Shown: positions 5,441 to 32,658 of the stretch, in pieces
Layout: each line of letters starts with the position of its first letter
Numbering within the stretch: position 1 is the stretch's first letter
Assembly (NCBI RefSeq): GCF_001194135.2
Contig: NC_068989.1
Coordinates: forward strand, 41,903,549 to 41,936,206
Length of the DNA: 32,658 bases
Reading direction: 5' to 3'
DNA from: Octopus bimaculoides
Taxonomy: Eukaryota
Made by a program: the position numbers and the translations under genes
Notes under the pieces: generated by a model
Databases searched by the model: none
What the model was told of the DNA's origin: nothing
What the model saw: only the letters and a program-made list of their open reading frames with translations

Positions 5441-5833
5441 GTATTTTCTTGAGATCGTCAACTGTTGAATGTAATTTAACAGTATAATTAAGTTAATTAC
5501 TAATCAATTAAAATCGCAATTAACTAAATTGCACTTCAGAAATAACAATATACAGAATTATTCCGGATGGAGTTGTTATTATGACCGAAGTTTGATATGA
5601 TAACCGAACTGGAGTCGAGAACTCATTGGGTGGCATTATATATCCGGCATGGCGTTTTCTTCTTGAATATCAACGCCGGGAACTATCTTGGGACAACTAT
5701 GAATTATGGTAGGACTGCTCACCGCTTTTATCAGCAGTAGCACTGTAAAAGTGACGAGTGCTTTTTATATTATAGATAAGTTACCTTTACTATATATAAT
5801 GCTGTGAGTATTAAAAGCAAATTACGGGGATTA

Positions 5834-6254
5834 GGCGATCTTACGATACGAGTCCTAAATATCGGCCTTTTCCGTAAAAAGTGTCTTCGGCGATCTTTAC
5901 CAAAGATCGGTCTTTTCCGTAAAAAGTGTTGGAGAGAAAGAGGGAAACGACGTCGTAAAAGCGAAAGAGATACAGAGAGCGCGATTTCTTTTGAAGGGTT
6001 TAGGGTCAGGCTTAGGGTTAGGGTTTGGGTTTTAGGGTTTGGGTTACGGAATTCCGTCCCTAACCGTAACCGTAACCGTAACCCTAAACACTAACCCTAA
6101 CCCTAAAACCCTAACCCTGACACTAAAACCCTAACCCTAACACCGTAGTGAAGATCTTGAGGGTGTTACGGAAAAGGCCGATCTTTGGTAAAGATCGCCG
6201 AAGACACTTTTTACGGAAAAGGCCGACATTTAGGACTCGTATCAAAAGATCGCC
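5834..6254. mobile_element. Non-autonomous DNA transposon (MITE), Merlin-like, 89-bp TIRs, telomere-like core
   Basis: TIRs at 5834-5922 and 6166-6254 match at 85/89. Perfect 8-bp TSD GGGGATTA at 5826-5833 and 6255-6262. Termini are GGCGA...TCGCC. The superfamily call rests on GG termini plus the 8-bp TSD. Confidence 0.85.
5995..6141. repeat. Head-to-head degenerate telomeric arrays (TTAGGG)n / (CCCTAA)n
   Basis: Four exact TTAGGG plus variants at 5995-6046, the palindrome ACGGAATTCCGT at 6046-6057, and seven exact CCCTAA plus CCGTAA variants at 6058-6141. Confidence 0.9.
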
Positions 6255-6770
6255 GGGGATTAATATTTAAAAAAATATTCTTTCTTAGCATATGTCGTCT
6301 ACTCGAAAATACTTTTTTGAAACGTGTACAACAGTCTAAGGTGTTATAAACAACCCATCAAAGTTAGGCTGGATGTGCCAACGAATATTCGTTACAAAAG
6401 CTGCTTCTGTCGCTGATAGATAATTTGTACACGGCTCGCCAGCTTTATCCGACACCACTGGGTGTTCGGTCAGTATTATTCAATGTCGGTTTGATTGATT
6501 TTCTATCTGGCATTCGGATTTCCTAGCTGCCGCTGATGATCTGCGATATGAAGAAATCACGTGATACAGTAGTACCATTGCCGGTGTACTAACGGAATTT
6601 CATCGACAGATAATAAAATTTCGATGCGTTTTAGCATTTGTCATTTACACGAAATGTTTTTCCGGGACGTTTATTGCAGTCTAAGGCATTATAAACAACA
6701 CATCCAAGTTAGGTTCGATGTGATAATTCTACTGTCGCTAATAGCTAAATTATTTTTAGCATTTAAGTAA

Positions 6771-7932: not shown

Positions 7933-8244
7933 NNNNNNNNNNNNNNNNNNNNNNNNNNNNNNNNNNNNNNNNNNNNNNNNNNNNNNNNNNNNNNNNNNNN
8001 NNNNNNNNNNNNNNNNNNNNNNNNNNNNNNNNNNNNNNNNNNNNNNNNNNNNNNNNNNNNNNNNNNNNNNNNNNNNNNNNNNNNNNNNNNNNNNNNNNNN
8101 NNNNNNNNNNNNNNNNNNNNNNNNNNNNNNNNNNNNNNNNNNNNNNNNNNNNNNNNNNNNNNNNNNNNNNNNNNNNNNNNNNNNNNNNNNNNNNNNNNNN
8201 NNNNNNNNNNNNNNNNNNNNNNNNNNNNNNNNNNNNNNNNNNNN
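7933..8244. other. Assembly gap flanked by (TACA)/(TA) microsatellites
   Basis: 312 N. Confidence 1.
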
Positions 8245-13983: not shown

Positions 13984-15663
13984 TTAGCAGATTTCTGAAA
14001 CTAGGTCTGCATCCCAGAAAGCGCGATTGACTTTTAGAAATAACTGCGTTTCTAAATTCATTGGTGTTAAGTATTGCCGAAAATCATTAAAAGCATAACC
14101 TGCTGAACAGAAGAAACGTTCGAAGATGTTGGACGGTGGTAACAAAAATCTACAGTTTAGATATCACCGGGGTGAAATGTATCTTTCTTGTGTTTTTTCA
14201 AACAAGCTGAAACGAAATCATCATCTTCTACAGGTACATAAGACTGTTGTGACCACTAGCAAAGGTTCAGTGTGTGGTGTCCGAGGCAGCCCTACCGTTT
14301 GCCGCCCCCAGACCCCACAAAAAAACACATATTGCTTACAGCAGACCCAAAAGTTCCACCCCTTTAAAAGTGCCGTCCGAGGCCGACCGTCACCTAACTA
14401 CGCTAGTGGTTGCGACGTGTCTGTCACCACTTTCAGCTGATGTAGAGCAGCCACTTCATCCACAGTTAGCTCTGCTTCTGCATGTAAAATTTTCACAACT
14501 CCACTTTCAAAATTTGTGCTGTGCACAATGGCTGCCGATGGAAGCAAATATTTTAAAAACTCCTCGTAAGGATACAATGCGAGAATTTCATCAAAAAGAA
14601 TTCGAGCATCTCCTAAATCTGTTTCTGTTCTTTGCAAGGCGACTGTTACTGAGTGTAACTTACCTAAATTGTCTTTTAGAGTCTGCAGATCATTATGATC
14701 GCGTGGTGTCAACAGATAATCAATCAGCTTTGAATCGTCTTGAAAAGAGTCTAAAAACAGCTTGAGTCGGATGTACCTCTCAATCATGCCATAAGCACAG
14801 GACCAACGGGTTTTATTTCTTTGTATAGGTTGCAAGTGCGTTTTTTCCCGAAGTTTACCCGCAAGTTTTAATGATTTTAGCTTGCCCATCAACATTTGAA
14901 TTTAATCAAGGAGAACTTCCTGCTTGTCGAGATAAGCAGAAACAGCTAGAGTGAATTTATGAGAGACACATTCAACCAATGGTATTCTACACAAATTCGC
15001 TATAGATTTGTTCACTTCAGTATTATCTCCGGCAATAGCTACAACATTTTCTAAATTTTCGTTATAGATACTTAAAACGTACTCTATAAATTCGACATAA
15101 TCAGAGGCAGTGAATGATACTTTATTTACCATTGGCGAAAATGCCAGCAAAACAGTGAAATAGTTATTTTGATAATTGCACGAATATGATGCAAAAAGTC
15201 CAATGAAATACGTCGAACCCTTAGTCCAACCGTCGATTACCAACGAAAGTTTACTTCGAAGGTCATCAGATATCTTCTTTTCCACTGCTCGAGTAAGTTT
15301 CTCCACGTATTTCTTTAATGTCACATTTATCATACTTCCCAAGTTTGTGTACATACGAGTCAGTGGGTTTTCAGTAAGGGAAAATGGTTTTAAACCAATA
15401 CATACCTACTCAATCCAACCATAAACATTTAAGGCCGAGCGACTGGTCACACTATTTCTTGGTGAAAGAAAACTCGCTAAAGATGGTTCTCCAGTTGCTT
15501 ATGTAGTAGAATACTCTGGATGCTGGTTTAGTATATGATTCATAATTTGTCCATCCAGTTCCTTTTTTTTCTGGATCAACTTTTTTTCCACACTTGCATT
15601 TCCATACATGTTCACTGTCTGGTTAAAATATTTTCTGACGATTTGCTCATTTTCACGCGACAT
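13984..15663 (-). pseudogene. hAT-family DDE transposase with BED-like zinc finger, about 500 aa when repaired
   Basis: Manual translation: MSRENEQ..VWKCKCGKK..KKGTGWTN/LMNHILNQHPEY (zinc finger); VIDGWT (D1); AGDN (D2); CVSH; TRWS; then YLNCRFLLPPSNIFERFFCSAG..LTPMNLETQLFLKVNRAFWD..IC* (E and dimerisation-like end). It has several stops and frameshifts and a MITE insertion. Confidence 0.9.
14254..14408 (+). mobile_element. 155-bp hAT-type MITE inserted in the transposase gene
   Basis: Termini CACTAGC...GCTAGTG. 8-bp TSD GTTGTGAC (14246-14253) / GTTGCGAC (14409-14416). Removing it restores the frame DTSQQSYVPVEDDDFVSACLKK. Confidence 0.88.
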
Positions 15664-17493: not shown

Positions 17494-18749
17494 ATTTGAC
17501 AAGACCCTTCAAATCTGTTTGTCTGTCTGTCTGTCTGCCTATCTGTCTGTCAGACTGTCTCTCTCTCTCCTTCCCTCCCTCCCTCTCTCTCCCTCTCTTC
17601 CCTCCCTCTCTCTGCTTCTCTCGCTCTCTCTTTAAGATCATGTCCTGTATTTTTGTTGTAGTTTTGTTGAGTAATACAGAAGATTGAGACCGGCGGCATT
17701 TGTTCACGGAACTGTGTTTTATATTCACGCAATTCATATCCGCCTCTCTCAGGAAACACGTGTACATTATATAAAGCCTGGTTCCTTTTCCATATGTACG
17801 GCGCTCAGACTCCGCATTTTTGCCTATCAAGAGTTATGGAGACTACCTAACCAGGTTGGATATAAGACTTAAATGTAGAACTGGTCTACTGTGCATGAAC
17901 CCTTTGGCAATATGTCGTGCCTTTAGGCGTATCGTTCGAATTTTTATACTCTACTGCATACACACATACACACGTACAGACGAACAGACACGTAAACAGA
18001 CATGCGCGCACGCGCCCACACACTCATGCACACACATACGTAGATACATACATACATACATACATACATACATACATTGAAATATAGATGATGGCTGTCC
18101 AGTCGTGACCGAAGAAGACCGTCACTGACCGTTAAGAATATTTTTCATACATACATGCATACATAGATACATTCATGCATACGTATGTATGTGTGTGTGC
18201 GTGCGCGCGCGCGTCCTCCTTTAGCTCTCTATACATATTAAACTTCATTGCTGTCTACCTTGGTACTGCTTGAAAAATGGAGACTGTGTCCGGTTTCTTG
18301 GCACTCCGTGAAAGAGAAACGATAAAATAAGCACCAGATTTTTGTTTAAATATGAATACTGAAGTTATTGTCATGGATTAAAACTCTTGAAGCCAGTACT
18401 TCAGCACGACCGTAGATCATATTTTTATTGAGAAAAAAAAAATCCATCGAATTACTTCAAAAAGGAAACAGAAAATTCTGAAAAAAATGGGTAGAGGAAG
18501 GAAACAACAAAAAATGGGAACAGTAACAGGTTGTAACAGTAGCTCCAGTTGAAATGGTGTGTTCAATCTCACCTTTGCATAATTGCAAAGGCGTTGCCAC
18601 CGAGAATGGCCAGCGACACTCACTGAAACAGTGACCCTACCTCGCGGATTTCATTTCTCAGACGGGCCGCTGTCACCCCGATTGTAATCGAAGGAAGCGA
18701 ATCAATCTGCTCTGTTGTTTTCTTGAGAACCCCACCATTTCTAAATTTT

Positions 18750-19784
18750 CATGTACATCTGTTGTTACATAGCCCAATGTACCTCTGTTTACAGGTACAA
18801 ATGAAATCCTGTAGCATAGATATACATACTGTAGGTTTCTCATTAGTTCTCTTTAGATGTTCTTTTTCCAATGGCTCCCATGCTGGAAAGTTGACAACCT
18901 TGATAGTCACGTTCAAGACATTTCTCACTTCAGTAAGAAAGGTTCTGGATGCTAAAGCTTCACGACGAAATATGCAATGTGTACCTACAGCAGATGAATT
19001 TTTGTCTTTCACCCTAGTAATGAATACAGACTGTAGACCAAGCATGGCTGGAGCTCCATCAGTGAACACCCCCTGCCAGCGAATCTCACGAAAGTTGGTT
19101 TTCCTGTAAGAAATTTGATACATCATGAAAAATAGCTGTTGCTGTTGTACAATTATCCATAGGGTGACAGAACAACATTTCCTCTTTTACACCGTTGCCT
19201 GATACAAAACGAGCATATACCAGTAGCTGAGAACCCTGAACGATATCAGTCATTTCGTCATACTGGATGGCAAAAACAAGAGAATCTCTTGTTTGGTCGA
19301 GAATTTGATATTTGATGTGTTGAGACAAATCACCGATCCTTCTCTTGACTGTATCGTTTGATAGTGAAATCTAGGAAAGCTTGCTTGCATTATCTTTTCC
19401 CAAAACGAGTTCTGCTGCACGAAGTAGACTTGATTTTATGAGAGACTCTCCGATGTTATGGCTCTTCTTACTCTTTGCAATCAATATGGTGATCTCACAG
19501 GAAGTCTCAATGACCATTGAAGTTTGTTGCCGAAATACTTCACTATCGTCCAACTTAGCTTGCTTCAAGGAATGTCTTTTTGTTTCAAAGAATGACTTGG
19601 GATTGTCGGCAAGGGTAGGATGTGTTGTCCTCAAGTGACGTTCCAAGCGTGAGAGTCGCATTCCATCATGGCCCAAAGTCTTGTAACATATCACACACTG
19701 GGGGACTTCTGTGTCACTCTTTTGGAGGGACACGAATCCAAATCGAATATATTCTTCAAGATACTTCCGTTTCTTTGCACTCAT
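18750..19784 (-). pseudogene. Buster/Charlie-group hAT transposase (ZBED5/ZBED8/FAM200-like), internally deleted
   Basis: MSAKKRKYLEEYIRFGF..PQCVIC..MRLSRLERHLRTTH (BED finger); ISLSNDTVKRRI; FAIQYDEMTDI (D1); FTDGAPAM (D2); THCIFRREALAS. After KVVNF it jumps to a later region, and the EVRWLS block and C-terminal E domain are missing. No matching TIR pair was found. Confidence 0.9.
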
Positions 19785-24465: not shown

Positions 24466-24794
24466 TCGAATAATCATTTCACACAAATGAGCGAACAGTT
24501 CGTAATCATTTCACGCAAAACAGTGGACGATTCGTACGTAATCATTCCGAGCAAAACAGTGAACGGTTTGTAAATATTTCACGCAAAACAGTGAATGATT
24601 CGTAATCATTTTACGCAAAAATGTGAACGTTTCGTAATCATTTCAAGCAAAACAGTAAACTCTTCGTAATCATTTCATGCAGAACAGTGAACGTTTCGTA
24701 ATCATTTCGCACAAAACATTGAACGGTACCTAATCACATCCCGCAAAATAGAGAACGGTTCCTAATCCTTTCACGCAAAATAACGAACAGTTCG
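24466..24794. repeat. 32-bp minisatellite, about 10 units
   Basis: Consensus TTCGTAATCATTTCACGCAAAACAGTGAACGN. Confidence 0.92.
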
Positions 24795-24835
24795 TGCAAA
24801 ATTGCATTTTATCTCAGTTGAAAAACATTCTAAAA

Positions 24836-25099: not shown

Positions 25100-26070
25100 T
25101 GGACATATCTACACAAATGCGCACCTCATCAAATTTGTTTCTTCATAACTTGTAGAAAAACGAGTATTTCTTAACGAAATTTTCCACAAATACCCGTCAG
25201 ATGGTTTAAATTCCATTTATATTGGAATTTGTTATGAAATTGTTTTCTGACATAGGTGAGGGGTTTCGGATAACTCACACGATTCGAATTTGTTTCGTCA
25301 TAACTTAGAAAACGAAAACAAAATGGTTAGTTCTTAATGAAATTTTCTACAAATACCTTTCAGGTAGTGTAAATTCTGTTTATAATGGAAATAGTTGTGA
25401 AAATTTTTTCGGAAGAGGGAAAAGTTTCAGATAAATAAAACGATTCGAATTTGTTTCTTCCTAACTTTCAAAAAGTAAAAAAAAAACAGAGACTAGTTCC
25501 TACTGAAATTTTCTACAAATATCTTTCAGATATAGATTCTGATTATATTGGAATTTGTTGCGAATTTTTTTTCTGTGGTAGAAAAGGGGTTTCGGGTAAA
25601 CCACACGATTCGTCCTTGTTTCTTTATAACCTTCAGAGATTTTCTACAAATATCTTTCTGATAGCGTAGATTACGATTAAATCGGAATTCAATATGAAAA
25701 ACAAAAACGAAAAGAAAAAATGCTGTTTGCGCACACTTGCATACTAACAGACATCGCATGTATATCTACAAAATGAAACTGGAAATTTTGAAAAAAATAT
25801 GGGATGTGTGGCAGTATGTAGGTGTGCATGGCCATCAAGTTAAAAAACAAACAAAATTACCGTAAATTCATATACAACCATAGTTAGCAACCTCTGATAT
25901 GTATTTGTAGAGATCTTCATTAAAAGATGCCTATTTTACTGAAAGTTATGAGGAAACGAAGTCGACTCGTTTGAATTGTCCGAAGATCCTCTCTCCCCAC
26001 ACCCGGAAAAAATTCACAACAGATTTCATAACAAATTCATAATCTATATCATTTGAAATGGTATTTCTCT
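25100..26070. repeat. Unclassified element built of about 160-bp sub-repeats (3+ direct, 1 inverted)
   Basis: AATTTGTTTC..ATAACTT..GAAATTTTCTACAAATA units start at about 25131, 25288, 25448 and 25612. An inverted unit lies at about 25890-26070. Confidence 0.7.
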
Positions 26071-27242: not shown

Positions 27243-27397
27243 TATATAGGTTTATGTTAGACTGAAAGAAGTTACAGACCTTGTCATTGCTAAGGAGCAA
27301 GAGAGATGACAGAAGTGGATTGGATGGTGTTTAGTCCAAGGCATCTTTTTAAGTTGTGGAATGACAAGAAAACGGAAGAGATTGTCAAAGAAAACAA

Positions 27398-29042: not shown

Positions 29043-29439
29043 TAAAAAGGTTCATACACACGTCTGTATGCGCACATGCACAAGAAAAAACAGGGCTAAA
29101 GGCAAAATACAGAAAAAAGTGTAAAAAAGCAATAAAAGTAAAACACGTCTATATACGCACATACTCGCATGCACGCACACACACGTCTATATACACACAT
29201 ACCCGCACACATTCACAAGCGCGTACGAAAGGTTCCATATACACGTCTATATACGCACAGGAAAACTGCAAGGTGGAAGGTAGAATACAGAAAAAATATG
29301 CGTAAAAAATATGAACAATAAACCTATAAAACAATATCTCTATAGATATGTAAAAAATATAAGAAATAAATATGAAATATAAGTAAAAAGTATAGAGAGA
29401 TAAAAAGCTTGTACGTGGACACAATGTAGAAAGCAAGTC

Positions 29440-30385
29440 CTATCTGTAATCTCGGGGGACCAAAAATGTAACAAATATTTAGCCACACGTGGACATGATC
29501 CGAAAAGTTCAGTTCTTGAATTTAGACATGTGGCGGGGTCTAAGCTGCTTTTCAAGATGAATCTGAGCCATCTTTCCATATCACAAACACCGCACTTTCC
29601 GCTGCTGTTGGTGTAAGGCTTGCACTTGGCTAAGATCTTCCAATAAATGTTGTAACTAACACTTTTATCTTTTAAGGACCATATATGACTGGATAATTTG
29701 GTCGTTTTCTTTTTATCCCAGTGCCTGAAGCTCAAGGTGTGATTATTGAACCTGGCATTGAAATTCCCCTCTGTAAGGCCCTTCGTCGAAACTGTATCCT
29801 TAGTGGATATAGAGTCCACGGTAGTTTCATAAATGATGGTCTCGGACATGCAAGCTCCATTTAGCGGGCACAAATTTTTACCCCTGCATGAACAGCTGGT
29901 TTCATATTGTGGTTCTTTGTGTTGTGTGCGATTATATTTTTAAAATTAGTAGTTGAGCTGAAACTGATTTTTAAGTTATGCCTGTTGAAGAGCTTTCTGT
30001 AACTATGGTTGACTGGAAAATGCCTATCTATCAGCGCTAAGAATTACTTGCCTACATTAAAGGTCACTTCGGGTGAGTAGGGGGATGTGAACCAGATAGT
30101 TTTCCTATTCCTATGTTTCCTTTTCTTTATTATTGGACTGGTGGCAGGTGTATAGGTTATTTCCTTGCTAAATCCACTATCTTTAAGATCCTTATTATAT
30201 ACTGGGGCAACGCTATTAAAAATGTCCCTATCGGAGGAGAGGCTAGAAATTCTTTTGCTAATGTTTTAAACACTATGGGGGGATGGCAGGAACCCACATT
30301 AATATAACTAAGTCTATCGTTGGGCTTCCTATAAGATTTATAAATATTCTTATTTAGATCTAAGGATACATCTAGGAAATTGACA
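29440..30385 (-). mobile_element. Penelope-like element (Neptune-type): RT C-terminus, Cys linker and GIY-YIG endonuclease
   Basis: Minus strand: VNFLDVSLDL..YKSYRKPND..YINVGSCHPP; RKTIWFTSPYS..NVGK*FLALIDRHFP..KLFNR..LKISFS; CSCRGKNLCPLNGAC..IIY..GLTEGNF..RFNNH..SFR..LSSHIWSLK..CGVC..E..LNSRTELFGSC. It has stops and frameshifts and runs into a gap. Confidence 0.92.
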
Positions 30386-30657
30386 NNNNNNNNNNNNNNN
30401 NNNNNNNNNNNNNNNNNNNNNNNNNNNNNNNNNNNNNNNNNNNNNNNNNNNNNNNNNNNNNNNNNNNNNNNNNNNNNNNNNNNNNNNNNNNNNNNNNNNN
30501 NNNNNNNNNNNNNNNNNNNNNNNNNNNNNNNNNNNNNNNNNNNNNNNNNNNNNNNNNNNNNNNNNNNNNNNNNNNNNNNNNNNNNNNNNNNNNNNNNNNN
30601 NNNNNNNNNNNNNNNNNNNNNNNNNNNNNNNNNNNNNNNNNNNNNNNNNNNNNNNNN
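30386..30657. other. Assembly gap
   Basis: 272 N. Confidence 1.
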
Positions 30658-30704
<47 letters not shown>

Positions 30705-30705
<1 letters not shown>

Positions 30706-30990
30706 TATCGTTATCACCGCTCTAGTTAGGAATCCAGTTCAGCTAAAACTTTGGTAAATCAGGCAATGAAAAGAATAAAAATTGGAAATAAAAGATGGAA
30801 GTAAAAATCTGTGGCCCTTTCTTCCTCCTGGTACCCTAAACACGTGACTGTTTCTCTTAATGGTTATTAATCCAGCCGTGAAAGTCTGGGAACTAGTGCA
30901 GCTACATTTAAAGCCTACCACATAGTAAACGTGAGTAGATAATCAAGTTCATTGCTAACCTGACATTGAAAGTTAACTAGTTTTGGGAAA
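30705..30990 (+). repeat. ~290-bp unclassified repeat, copy 1, between (CA)n tracts
   Basis: ATCACCGCTCTAGTTAGGAATC...GTGACTGTTTCTCTTAATGG..ATTAATCCAGCCGTGAAAGT...ATCAAGTTCATTGCTAA is shared with 31318-31625. Confidence 0.85.
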
Positions 30991-31029
<39 letters not shown>

Positions 31030-31071
31030 TATGCACGGGTGCGCGCACGCACACACACATACACATACACA

Positions 31072-31238
31072 AACTTTCGGCCTTAGCATAACTACAGACA
31101 CCATCCTGACGGTTGTCAATTTCCTAGATGTGTCCTTAGATCTAAATAAGAATATTTATAAATCTTATAGGAAGCCCAACGATAGACTTAGTTATATTAA
31201 TGTAGGTTCCTACCATCCCTCAGAGTGTTTAAAACATA
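31072..31238 (+). mobile_element. Inverted partial duplicate of the Penelope RT segment
   Basis: FGLSITTDTILTVVNFLDVSLDLNKNIYKSYRKPNDRLSYINVGSYHP. 31114-31219 is the reverse complement of 30280-30385 with 3 mismatches in 106 bp. Confidence 0.9.
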
Positions 31239-31264
31239 CACACACAAACACAGACACGCACGCG

Positions 31265-31302
<38 letters not shown>

Positions 31303-31317
31303 CACACACACACACAT

Positions 31318-31625
31318 TATCATTAGTGGGGATCACCGCTCTAGTTAGGAATCTCGTTCAGCTGCAACCTTGGGAAAAGAATAAAAAATGGAAATGGGAG
31401 ATGAAAGTAAAAGTCTGTAGCCCTGTCATTCACCTGGTTCCCAGTGGCCCTATCTTGCTCCTGGTGCCCTAAACTGGTGACTGTTTCTCTTAATGGGTAT
31501 TAATCCAGCCGTGAAAGTGTAGGAACCGGTGCAGCCACGTTTAACGCCTACCATATACTAAACGTGAGCAGATAATCAAGTTCATTGCTAAACTGACATT
31601 GAAAAGTTAACCAGTTTTAGAAAAT
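31318..31625 (+). repeat. ~290-bp unclassified repeat, copy 2
   Basis: Diverged homologue of 30705-30990, preceded by (CA)n and followed by (CT)n/(CA)n. Confidence 0.85.
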
Positions 31626-32601: not shown

Positions 32602-32658
32602 ATTAGACTCTGGGGGGCGATTAGACTCTGGGGGGCGATTAGACTCTGGGGGCGATTA
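32602..32658. repeat. 18-bp G-rich minisatellite running off the window end
   Basis: ATTAGACTCTGGGGGGCG x2, a 17-bp unit with five G, then ATTA. Confidence 0.92.

What the first reader, a model, noticed from the sequence alone, without database searches (positions are those of the whole stretch)
5995..6141. A transposon carrying a telomere-fusion-like cassette: (TTAGGG)n - palindrome - (CCCTAA)n
Seen: the MITE interior is a G-rich telomeric tract facing a C-rich tract across the perfect 12-bp palindrome ACGGAATTCCGT, so the whole element is a nested fold-back. Established: TTAGGG is the ancestral metazoan telomere repeat, and head-to-head arrays are the classic signature of end-to-end chromosome fusion. 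Inference: here the signature is mobile cargo bounded by TIRs and a TSD. It could spread interstitial telomeric sites, recruit telomere-binding proteins, form G4/i-motif or cruciform structures, seed telomerase healing after a break at the central palindrome, and mimic fusion scars in karyotype studies. I do not know whether this family has been described.
Basis: partly seen in the sequence, partly recalled or inferred. Interest (0 to 1): 0.82.

Follow-up and report, generated by a model that had tools for sequence, protein, structure and literature searches.

The report
Octopus foldback MITE with telomere-like core
A 421-bp non-coding transposon copy in the Octopus bimaculoides genome carries two short, decayed telomere-type repeat tracts facing each other; this is a real but probably passive oddity, not a chromosome-fusion scar, and only one copy could be examined.

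Summary
Window 5995-6141 has a degenerate (TTAGGG)n tract of 51 nt, the perfect 12-bp palindrome ACGGAATTCCGT at 6046-6057, and a degenerate (CCCTAA)n tract of 84 nt. All 15 telomere-like 12-mers of the window lie here, against 1.4 expected. The tracts sit inside a 421-bp element with 89-nt terminal inverted repeats (85/89 complementary) and a perfect 8-bp target-site duplication, GGGGATTA. The whole element folds into one hairpin (-149 kcal/mol, z = -23).

The window comes from Octopus bimaculoides chromosome CM046609.1. TTAGGG is the only telomere motif determined in a cephalopod.

My reading is a non-autonomous foldback-type DNA transposon (MITE). The telomere-like core was already degenerate when this copy inserted, so it travelled as cargo. 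The core most likely arose at an internal break or deletion junction where both 3' ends were extended by telomerase and then joined. Head-to-head ITSs of this origin have been reported in vertebrates.

It is not a fusion scar. The 12-bp palindrome is not statistically special, and no function is shown.

I found no second copy in about 150 kb of Octopus DNA or in any scanned collection, so conservation of the core across a family remains untested. A different O. bimaculoides foldback has a telomeric palindrome of opposite polarity. Interest is low to moderate.

The parts
5826..5833 (.). Left copy of the 8-bp target-site duplication, GGGGATTA
   Evidence: It is identical to 6255-6262 and directly abuts the TIR end. 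A 9-bp reading (CGGGGATTA) is possible only if the two TIR ends are offset by one base.
5834..5922 (+). Left terminal inverted repeat, starting GGCGATCTT. It holds two subrepeats, each with GGCGATCTT and CTTTTCCGTAAAAAGTGT (5867-5884 and 5912-5929). The inner 18-mer runs 7 nt past the end of the arm.
   Evidence: the repeat finder I1 gives 89 nt at 96% complementarity to 6166-6254. Direct families D4 and D9 show the subrepeats. The 19-mer occurs 3 times in the window, all inside the element, against 0 expected.
5930..5994 (+). Left spacer of 65 nt, purine-rich, with no counterpart on the right side
   Evidence: A global alignment of the left half against the reverse complement of the right half leaves it unaligned.
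5995..6045 (+). G-rich arm: degenerate (TTAGGG)n of about 8 units, 4 of them perfect. It contains a canonical G4 motif at 6015-6043.
   Evidence: TRF, pattern search, unit count, G4 regular expression.
6046..6057 (.). Perfect 12-bp palindrome ACGGAATTCCGT, formed by facing TTACGG/CCGTAA variant units around AATT
   Evidence: It is not statistically unusual, since the window has 127 palindromes of 12 bp or more.
6058..6141 (+). C-rich arm: degenerate (CCCTAA)n of about 13 units, 7 of them perfect, including (CCGTAA)3 next to the centre. A G4 motif lies on the - strand at 6095-6117.
   Evidence: TRF, pattern search.
6142..6165 (+). Right spacer of 24 nt, unrelated to the left spacer
6166..6254 (-). 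Right terminal inverted repeat. Its inner subrepeat is cut short after CCGTAA.
   Evidence: the repeat finder I1 and the alignment of the two halves.
6255..6262 (.). Right copy of the 8-bp target-site duplication, GGGGATTA

Best explanation
This is one inserted copy of a 421-bp non-autonomous, foldback-type class II transposon (a MITE) in Octopus bimaculoides. A transposase supplied in trans would recognise the 89-nt TIRs and their repeated CTTTTCCGTAAAAAGTGT / GGCGATCTT subterminal motifs, and integration duplicated 8 bp of target. The interior is a short, degenerate, head-to-head interstitial telomeric sequence that was already part of the element when this copy inserted. It is passenger DNA. 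Its most likely origin is a double-strand break or abortive gap-repair junction inside a progenitor element. Telomerase extended both 3' ends, giving 5'-left-(TTAGGG)n on the top strand and the same on the bottom strand. The two ends were then joined at the short self-complementary AATT, which gives exactly the observed 5'-(TTAGGG)n-(CCCTAA)n-3' polarity at the middle of a deletion derivative. Slippage and point mutation then degraded the arrays.

Shown: the anatomy, the TSD, the hairpin potential, the host species, and the excess degeneracy of the arrays relative to the TIRs. Inferred: mobilisation in trans, the telomerase origin, and the absence of a host function.
For: - TIRs of 89 nt at 96% complementarity, with internal subrepeats.
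- A perfect 8-bp TSD directly at the TIR ends. The chance of this at a fixed position is 4^-8.
- No coding capacity. The only long ORF (96 aa, 5804-6094) shares no words with any of 5.8 billion proteins.
- A hairpin of -149 kcal/mol, z = -23.
- The host is O. bimaculoides. The only experimentally determined cephalopod telomere motif is TTAGGG (PMC13218726; PMC6160780).
- Array substitutions (9-11 in 136 nt) exceed the about 3.1 predicted from TIR arm divergence, with P = 0.004 to 0.0003. The arrays therefore predate this insertion.
- The spacers differ in length (65 nt beyond the left inner subrepeat, 24 nt on the right) and are unrelated, and the arrays differ in length. The unit order is not mirrored. 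This fits two independently extended ends better than duplication of the whole element as a palindrome.
- There is published precedent. Short ITSs are inserted at DSB repair sites, sometimes inside repetitive elements. Three of 41 TERC-ITS loci have head-to-head arrays, explained by a second telomerase acting on the other side of the break (PMC8537989).
Against: - Only one copy was seen. None turned up in about 62 kb of further O. bimaculoides DNA or about 61 kb of O. sinensis and O. vulgaris DNA. Membership of a multi-copy family and presence of the core in the master copy are not shown.
- The TIR start GGCGA does not fit the hAT terminal consensus that I recall, so the superfamily is open.
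- TTACGG variants cluster next to the centre on both arms. The same hexamer is part of the TIR subrepeat (CCGTAA in CTTTTCCGTAAAAAGTGT). This could mean local palindromic duplication, or expansion of an element-borne motif, rather than telomerase synthesis.
- With the conservative assumption that all TIR divergence lies on one arm, the excess of array substitutions is only marginal (P = 0.16 to 0.05).
- A second octopus foldback has C-then-G polarity, which two-sided telomerase extension cannot produce.
Confidence: 0.55

Rival explanations
1. The hexamer arrays are intrinsic foldback-arm subrepeats. As in Drosophila FB or sea-urchin TU elements, the inner parts of the long inverted repeats are tandem short repeats. 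Here they would have grown by slippage from the element's own TTACGG/CCGTAA motif and drifted to TTAGGG, so the likeness to the telomere repeat is coincidental or convergent. Telomerase is not involved.
For: - CCGTAA is part of the TIR subrepeat CTTTTCCGTAAAAAGTGT.
- A perfect (CCGTAA)3 lies next to the centre, and TTACGG closes the left arm.
- TTACGGAA is shared by the central palindrome and the inner edge of the right TIR.
- The whole element is a hairpin.
Against: - Eleven units are exactly the host-type TTAGGG/CCCTAA, against four TTACGG.
- TTACGG to TTAGGG is a C-to-G transversion that would have had to spread through both arms.
- All outer units are of the TTAGGG type, and the TTACGG variant is confined to the centre.
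Confidence: 0.17
2. The telomere-like core is private to this copy. After an ordinary MITE inserted here, a break inside it was repaired with capture of an already degenerate telomeric or ITS fragment, or by telomerase addition followed by fast decay. The core was never mobile.
For: - ITSs are known to be inserted into pre-existing repeats during DSB repair (PMC8537989).
- No second copy with the core was found.
- With the conservative rate assumption, the degeneracy excess is only marginal.
Against: - With the standard assumption, the arrays are three to four times more decayed than the TIR arms allow.
- Capturing two inverted degenerate tracts in one event is less parsimonious.
Confidence: 0.12
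3. The whole element arose by fold-back inverted duplication at a replication-stalling ITS. A half element (TIR-spacer-ITS) was copied back on itself, creating the second TIR and the head-to-head arrays together, and the product then transposed.
For: - The structure is a nested hairpin.
- TTACGG variants flank the centre symmetrically.
- A second, unrelated foldback in L042 has a perfect telomeric palindrome of opposite polarity at its centre, which a polarity-blind fold-back mechanism would explain.
Against: - The spacers on the two sides are unrelated and differ in length.
- The arrays differ in length (51 and 84 nt), and the unit order is not mirrored beyond chance (p = 0.37).
Confidence: 0.08
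4. It is a relic of an end-to-end chromosome fusion, that is, a fusion-type ITS.
For: The head-to-head polarity is the same as at human 2q13 (general knowledge).
Against: - The arrays total 135 nt.
- They lie between the two arms of one 421-bp TIR element that is itself bracketed by an 8-bp TSD.
- There are no subtelomere-like flanks, and the flanking DNA is unique sequence and microsatellites.
Confidence: 0.01
5. It is an assembly or cloning artefact, such as a hairpin contig of a short-read assembly or a linker-mediated chimera. CGGAATTCCG equals a classical EcoRI linker.
For: - The assembly is short-read based, with seven N gaps in this window.
- The centre contains an EcoRI site inside a linker-like decamer (the linker sequence is from memory).
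Against: - The arms are imperfect and unequal, which is not the perfect X + rc(X) of a hairpin contig.
- No gap adjoins the element; the nearest are at 1572-2537 and 7933-8244.
- TIR plus TSD is a biological signature.
- No linker-based library is expected in this project (memory).
Confidence: 0.03
6. The cassette is functional for the host or the element. For example, it might serve as a binding platform for telomere proteins, a G4/cruciform regulatory element, or a hairpin precursor of small RNAs.
For: - Two of the three canonical G4 motifs in the 32.6-kb window lie in the two arms, one per strand.
- The hairpin is stable.
- There are weak hairpin-shape matches to miRNA precursor models.
Against: - The Rfam matches score 16-30 bits against gathering scores of 49-135, so they are generic hairpin hits.
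- The arrays are decayed rather than conserved.
- No orthologous or paralogous copy is available to show constraint.
Confidence: 0.03

Closest known systems
Foldback (FB-type) transposons and foldback MITEs (Drosophila FB, sea-urchin TU, Ciona and plant foldback elements; from memory)
   Same: The long inverted arms make up most of the element. The arms are built partly of short tandem subrepeats that therefore face each other, there is no coding capacity, a short TSD is present, and the whole element can form one hairpin.
   Different: The facing subrepeats here are the host's telomere-type hexamer. The arms are interrupted by unrelated spacers of unequal length. The TSD is 8 bp rather than the 9 bp of Drosophila FB. 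No related autonomous element is known.
Head-to-head short interstitial telomeric sequences inserted at double-strand-break repair sites (TERC-ITS loci of mouse lemur and Xenopus; PMC8537989)
   Same: Short, imperfect telomeric arrays at an internal site lie in head-to-head orientation and are sometimes inserted inside repetitive elements. The proposed mechanism, telomerase acting on both sides of one break, predicts exactly the polarity seen here.
   Different: Those loci are fixed genomic insertions, not cargo bounded by TIRs and a TSD. They are defined by an adjacent fragment retrotranscribed from telomerase RNA, which cannot be tested here because no octopus telomerase RNA is at hand. All known examples are vertebrate.
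Tandem-repeat-containing MITE-like elements of molluscs (pearl/CvA of oysters, DTC84 of Donax; from memory)
   Same: These are molluscan non-autonomous elements whose core is a short tandem array between conserved left and right arms. They show how repeats can be spread by mobile elements.
   Different: Their cores are unidirectional satellite-like monomers of about 100-170 bp plus a microsatellite, and many were later reassigned to Helitron/Helentron derivatives without TIRs. Here the core is two inverted hexamer arrays between true TIRs.
Fusion-type ITS (human 2q13; general knowledge, and PMC9498494 and PMC8537989 for the classification)
   Same: The polarity is 5'-(TTAGGG)n-(CCCTAA)n-3', with degenerate repeats.
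   Different: A fusion ITS lies between two former subtelomeres at a synteny junction. This one is 135 nt long, inside a 421-bp transposon with a TSD.
Telomere-bearing transposons of ciliates (Oxytricha TBE1, Tetrahymena Tel-1; from memory)
   Same: They are DNA transposon-like elements that carry the host's telomeric repeat in inverted orientation.
   Different: In ciliates the telomeric blocks are at the outer termini of the element. Here they are at its centre and the termini are unrelated TIRs.

Membership tests
MITE (miniature non-autonomous class II TIR element) | Terminal inverted repeats at both ends | tested here: met
   Arms 5834-5922 and 6166-6254, 89 nt, 96% complementary.
MITE (miniature non-autonomous class II TIR element) | Target-site duplication directly flanking the TIRs | tested here: met
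   GGGGATTA at 5826-5833 and 6255-6262.
MITE (miniature non-autonomous class II TIR element) | Small size and no coding capacity | tested here: met
   The element is 421 bp. Its longest ORF of 96 aa has no relative among 5.8 billion proteins.
MITE (miniature non-autonomous class II TIR element) | Many dispersed copies forming a family; empty sites | tested here: inconclusive
   There is no second copy in the window, in about 62 kb of further O. bimaculoides DNA or in about 61 kb of O. sinensis and O. vulgaris DNA. Metagenome, prokaryote and viral scans gave only chance hits. The whole octopus genome could not be searched.
Foldback (FB-type) element | Inverted arms occupy most of the element, so the whole element folds back on itself | tested here: met
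   Minimum free energy -149.2 kcal/mol, z = -23.3, with the TIR arms and the array arms both paired.
Foldback (FB-type) element | Arms composed of tandem subrepeats | tested here: met
   There are two subrepeats per TIR arm (families D4, D5, D9, D10), plus hexamer arrays of about 8 and about 13 units.
hAT-superfamily MITE | 8-bp TSD | tested here: met
   The TSD is 8 bp. A 9-bp reading is possible only with offset TIR ends.
hAT-superfamily MITE | TIR termini of the YARNG type and a related hAT transposase partner | tested here: not met
   The TIR starts GGCGA (the consensus is from memory). The hAT-like ORFs in the window (14398-15354 and 18749-19784) have no sequence matching the MITE TIR near them. 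The superfamily is left open; Merlin, MULE and P remain possible on TSD length.
Fusion-type ITS | Head-to-head (TTAGGG)n(CCCTAA)n | tested here: met
Fusion-type ITS | Lies between former subtelomeres of two ancestral chromosomes at a synteny junction | tested here: not met
   The arrays lie between the two arms of one TSD-bounded element. Synteny itself is not testable with these tools.
Short ITS inserted by telomerase at a DSB (including TERC-ITS) | Short array of exact or near-exact telomeric hexamers at an internal site | tested here: met
   Arrays of 51 and 84 nt, with 11 perfect units of about 21.
Short ITS inserted by telomerase at a DSB (including TERC-ITS) | Sudden appearance relative to an orthologous or paralogous empty site | not testable with these tools
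   No orthologous locus and no other copy of the element could be retrieved.
Short ITS inserted by telomerase at a DSB (including TERC-ITS) | Adjacent fragment derived from telomerase RNA | not testable with these tools
   No cephalopod telomerase RNA is available. An Rfam scan of 5780-6310 gave no telomerase RNA match.
miRNA precursor | Match to a curated family at its gathering score | tested here: not met
   The best match is mir-766 at 30.3 bits against a gathering score of 110. All matches are generic hairpin hits.

The most novel reading that the evidence does not exclude
Octopus genomes may hold one or several multi-copy foldback-MITE families whose conserved core is a head-to-head telomeric repeat, born by two-sided telomerase healing of a break inside a transposon. 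If so, transposition rather than chromosome fusion or local repair would disperse many short inverted ITSs, G4/cruciform-prone sites and pseudo fusion scars across cephalopod chromosomes. The second, unrelated foldback with a telomeric palindrome in L042 would be another instance.
Probability: 0.22. Interest if true: 0.6.

Novelty: new member of a known kind. Interest (0 to 1): 0.3.

Why it matters
If the telomere-like core is shared by a whole family, this would be a clear case of a DNA transposon spreading interstitial telomeric sequences. The abundance of such sequences on metazoan chromosome arms is still called a mystery (PMC9071541). It would also warn people who read head-to-head TTAGGG/CCCTAA junctions in new chromosome-scale assemblies as fusion scars. 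Cephalopod karyotype evolution is an active topic, so the warning is timely. As a single decayed copy, the element is mainly a curiosity and a pointer to a cheap genome-wide check.

Tried and rejected
1. **Metagenome scan.** I scanned JGI/ENA metagenome contigs with the 18-mer CTTTTCCGTAAAAAGTGT. All 38 loci are 18-26-nt chance matches and none is a copy. L008 and L033 also hold a telomere-like stretch 1.7 kb away but are unrelated.

2. **Prokaryote and viral scans.** A two-box TIR pattern gave 0 viral hits. It gave 3 hits in Saprospiraceae MAGs, which are arrays of a bacterial TTTCCGTAAAAAGTGTTATA motif with no further similarity.

3. **ORF search.** I searched the protein collection with the 96-aa ORF that spans the left TIR and G arm, hoping for ORFs called on other copies. 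There were no candidates.

4. **More octopus DNA through TE-protein look-ups.** I fetched L039-L044 and L048, plus L049 from an unidentified ENA assembly. No copy was found. The third protein search, with the ORF at 29340-29873 that I took to be Penelope-like, returned one short hit and gave no new loci. Look-up of a window hAT ORF showed it is not on record. Cluster look-up gave no new places.

5. **Paralogous empty site.** I looked for one by BLAST of the rejoined flanks. The flanks are unique in the accessible data.

6. **Mirror-copy test.** I asked whether the two arms are mirror copies, using unit-order shuffling. The result was not significant, with an observed score of 27 against 25.6 +/- 3.4 (p = 0.37).

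7. **Rfam.** Nothing reached gathering scores in the window. Only weak generic miRNA-hairpin hits appeared in the element.

8. **Literature.** Eight searches (seven by topic, one for a 14-nt TIR string) found no description of a TIR element with a head-to-head telomeric core and no paper containing the TIR sequence. Repbase and Dfam could not be queried.

9. **Rejected explanations.** I rejected a chromosome-fusion scar, an EcoRI-linker or hairpin-contig artefact, and any significance of the 12-bp palindrome by itself.

Full report
**Where the window comes from.** The window is eukaryotic. It has seven runs of N, more than 100 microsatellite or tandem arrays and no Rfam match at gathering scores. 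The ORF at 19371-19784(-) is found, residue for residue, on record CM046609.1 of assembly GCA_001194135.2, at 41.92 Mb of a 96.9-Mb chromosome. Proteins on other chromosomes of that assembly are named Octopus bimaculoides by NCBI. The only experimentally determined cephalopod telomere motif is TTAGGG, found in Amphioctopus areolatus (PMC13218726; PMC6160780). The repeat in question is therefore the expected host telomere repeat. That expectation is an inference for O. bimaculoides itself.

**The observation.**
- A period-6 G-rich array runs from 5995 to about 6045, and a period-6 C-rich array from 6058 to 6141.
- All 15 near-matches to TTAGGGTTAGGG in the 32.6-kb window lie here, G-strand on the left and C-strand on the right. 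Shuffles give 1.4 matches on average.
- Both arrays are degenerate, with 72% and 78% matches by TRF. There are 4 and 7 perfect units.
- The palindrome ACGGAATTCCGT is perfect and lies at 6046-6057.
- It is not unusual in itself, since the window has 127 perfect palindromes of 12 bp or more. Its outer eight bases are simply a TTACGG variant unit facing a CCGTAA variant unit.

**The element around the core.**
- The inverted arms 5834-5922 and 6166-6254 are 89 nt long and 96% complementary.
- Each arm contains two subrepeats carrying GGCGATCTT and CTTTTCCGTAAAAAGTGT (families D4, D5, D9, D10). The 19-mer occurs three times, only here, against 0 expected.
- GGGGATTA lies directly outside both ends, at 5826-5833 and 6255-6262.
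- The element is 421 bp long and has no credible coding capacity.
- As single-stranded DNA it forms one long hairpin, at -149.2 kcal/mol and z = -23. The core alone gives -42.5 kcal/mol and z = -7.5.
- The fold-back is imperfect. Past the left inner subrepeat there are 65 nt of spacer before the array, but only 24 unrelated nt on the right. The right inner subrepeat is cut short after CCGTAA.

TIRs plus a TSD are the signature of cut-and-paste integration, so I read the element as a foldback-type MITE. The superfamily is open. An 8-bp TSD fits hAT, but the GGCGA terminus does not fit the hAT consensus as I recall it. Merlin, MULE or P-like elements remain possible.

**Is the core cargo or a later addition?** I could examine only this one copy, so I compared internal clocks.
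- The two TIR arms differ at 4 of 89 positions. If they were identical at insertion, each lineage has changed by about 2.2%.
- That rate predicts about 3 substitutions in the 136 nt of arrays. The arrays show 9-11 departures from TTAGGG by substitution alone, giving P = 0.004 to 0.0003.
- If all TIR divergence is charged to one arm, the result is only marginal, P = 0.16 to 0.05.

The arrays were therefore probably already decayed when this copy inserted, which favours the view that they travelled with the element. This is indirect evidence. It does not exclude later capture of an already degenerate telomeric fragment.

**How the core may have arisen.** Three observations argue against a simple duplication of half an element as a palindrome.
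- The spacers are unrelated.
- The array lengths are unequal.
- The order of variant units in the two arms is no more similar than in shuffled orders (p = 0.37).

The polarity 5'-(TTAGGG)n-(CCCTAA)n-3' is what results if both 3' ends of one break are extended by telomerase and then joined. This mechanism has been proposed for head-to-head arrays at 3 of 41 vertebrate TERC-ITS loci, and some TERC-ITSs lie inside repetitive elements (PMC8537989). MITEs are commonly thought to arise by internal deletion during gap repair of longer elements (general knowledge). That puts a repair junction exactly where the core lies.

I therefore favour telomerase healing of both ends of an internal break in a progenitor, with joining at the self-complementary AATT. 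I hold this step with modest confidence. Two observations pull the other way.
- TTACGG variants cluster at the centre on both arms, and CCGTAA is also part of the TIR subrepeat. This allows a local palindromic duplication or an element-borne origin of the hexamer.
- A second foldback in O. bimaculoides has a perfect 50-nt telomeric palindrome of the opposite polarity at its centre, between 32-nt arms that are 91% complementary (L042:1-255). Telomerase extension cannot produce that polarity, whereas polarity-blind fold-back duplication at an ITS can.

**What it is not.** It is not a chromosome-fusion relic. The arrays total 135 nt and lie between the arms of one TSD-bounded element. It is unlikely to be an assembly artefact. 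The arms are imperfect and unequal, and no gap adjoins the element. The Rfam hits to miRNA precursors score 16-30 bits against gathering scores of 49-135 and reflect hairpin shape only.

**Function.** Nothing here shows a function. Each arm does contain one canonical G4 motif, at 6015-6043 on the + strand and 6095-6117 on the - strand. These are two of only three in the window. The hairpin or cruciform potential is high. The decay of the repeats speaks against selection on TTAGGG identity.

**Search for other copies.**
- There is no second copy in the window.
- None appears in about 62 kb of further O. bimaculoides DNA, about 61 kb of O. sinensis and O. vulgaris DNA, or 20 kb of an unidentified ENA assembly.
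- Scans of metagenome, prokaryote-genome and viral collections gave only chance matches.
- A protein-space search with the ORF spanning the TIR found nothing.
- Eight literature searches, one of them for a 14-nt TIR string, found no description of such an element.
- Repbase and Dfam were not available.

The whole octopus genome, the obvious target, cannot be searched with these tools.

**Verdict.** The feature is real and correctly described. It is best filed as a new member of a known kind: a foldback-type MITE with a tandem-repeat core, the core being a head-to-head short ITS. The fusion-like look is a by-product of how the core formed and not evidence of any fusion. Whether the cassette is conserved and spread by a family is open. 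I put that at about one in five. A single genome-wide BLAST would settle it.

Noticed in passing
L042:1-255 (O. bimaculoides CM046601.1, about 93,888,411-93,888,665): This is a second, unrelated foldback. Arms 1-32 and 224-255 are 91% complementary, and at the centre lies a perfect 50-nt palindrome (TAACCC)4TA|TAGGG(TTAGGG)3TTA. Its polarity is C-rich then G-rich, opposite to the window element. It sits directly right of a 76-N gap, and the left arm is cut by the locus start.
   Followed up: partly
L042:25000-27420: About 2.4 kb is enriched in C-strand telomere-like 5-mers (CTAA-rich, very degenerate, for example 27286-27318 with TAACCC x5.5). It looks like an old, decayed interstitial telomeric array.
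   Followed up: partly
window 18749-19784 (-): This is a ZBED/FAM200-like, hAT-derived ORF, an annotated O. bimaculoides protein (P0001). Its closest relatives are in decapod and stomatopod crustaceans (Macrobrachium, Homarus, Oratosquilla) at 77-81% amino-acid identity, as close as or closer than the Octopus paralogues at 73-79%. This may reflect horizontal transposon transfer between cephalopods and crustaceans.
   Followed up: no
window 29340-31348 (-): I read these by eye as pieces of a Penelope-like retroelement. The 177-aa ORF at 29340-29873 looked to me like a GIY-YIG-type endonuclease domain, but Pfam gave no match and it has only one homologue in the collection. Two copies of the motif NFLDVSLDLNKNIYKSYRKPNDRLSYINVGS lie at about 30.2 and 31.1 kb. 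No link to the MITE was found.
   Followed up: partly
window 14398-15354 (-): Two adjacent ORFs (165 and 150 aa) look by eye like parts of a hAT transposase (DGWT motif), probably one frameshifted copy. Pfam gave no hAT match. No sequence like the MITE TIR lies near them, so they are not its evident autonomous partner.
   Followed up: partly
L045:1-230, L046:6430-7250, L047:1470-1910 (Saprospiraceae MAGs): These hold irregular arrays of a bacterial motif, TTTCCGTAAAAAGTGTTATA, that happens to share 15-17 nt with the MITE subterminal repeat. There is no further similarity, so I treat it as coincidence. The arrays themselves look like clustered protein-binding sites.
   Followed up: partly
window 24471-24795, 25168-25571 and 32602-32658: Three minisatellites: a 32-nt unit x10, a 163-nt unit x2.5, and an 18-nt unit ATTAGACTCTGGGGGGCG x3.2 that runs off the window end.
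   Followed up: no
window 6285-6377 and 6631-6722: A 93-nt direct repeat at 77% identity lies just right of the MITE. Its nature is unknown.
   Followed up: no
window 6047-6056: The centre of the palindrome, CGGAATTCCG, equals a classical EcoRI 10-mer linker (from memory). I consider it coincidence, because the arms are imperfect and the element has a TSD.
   Followed up: partly
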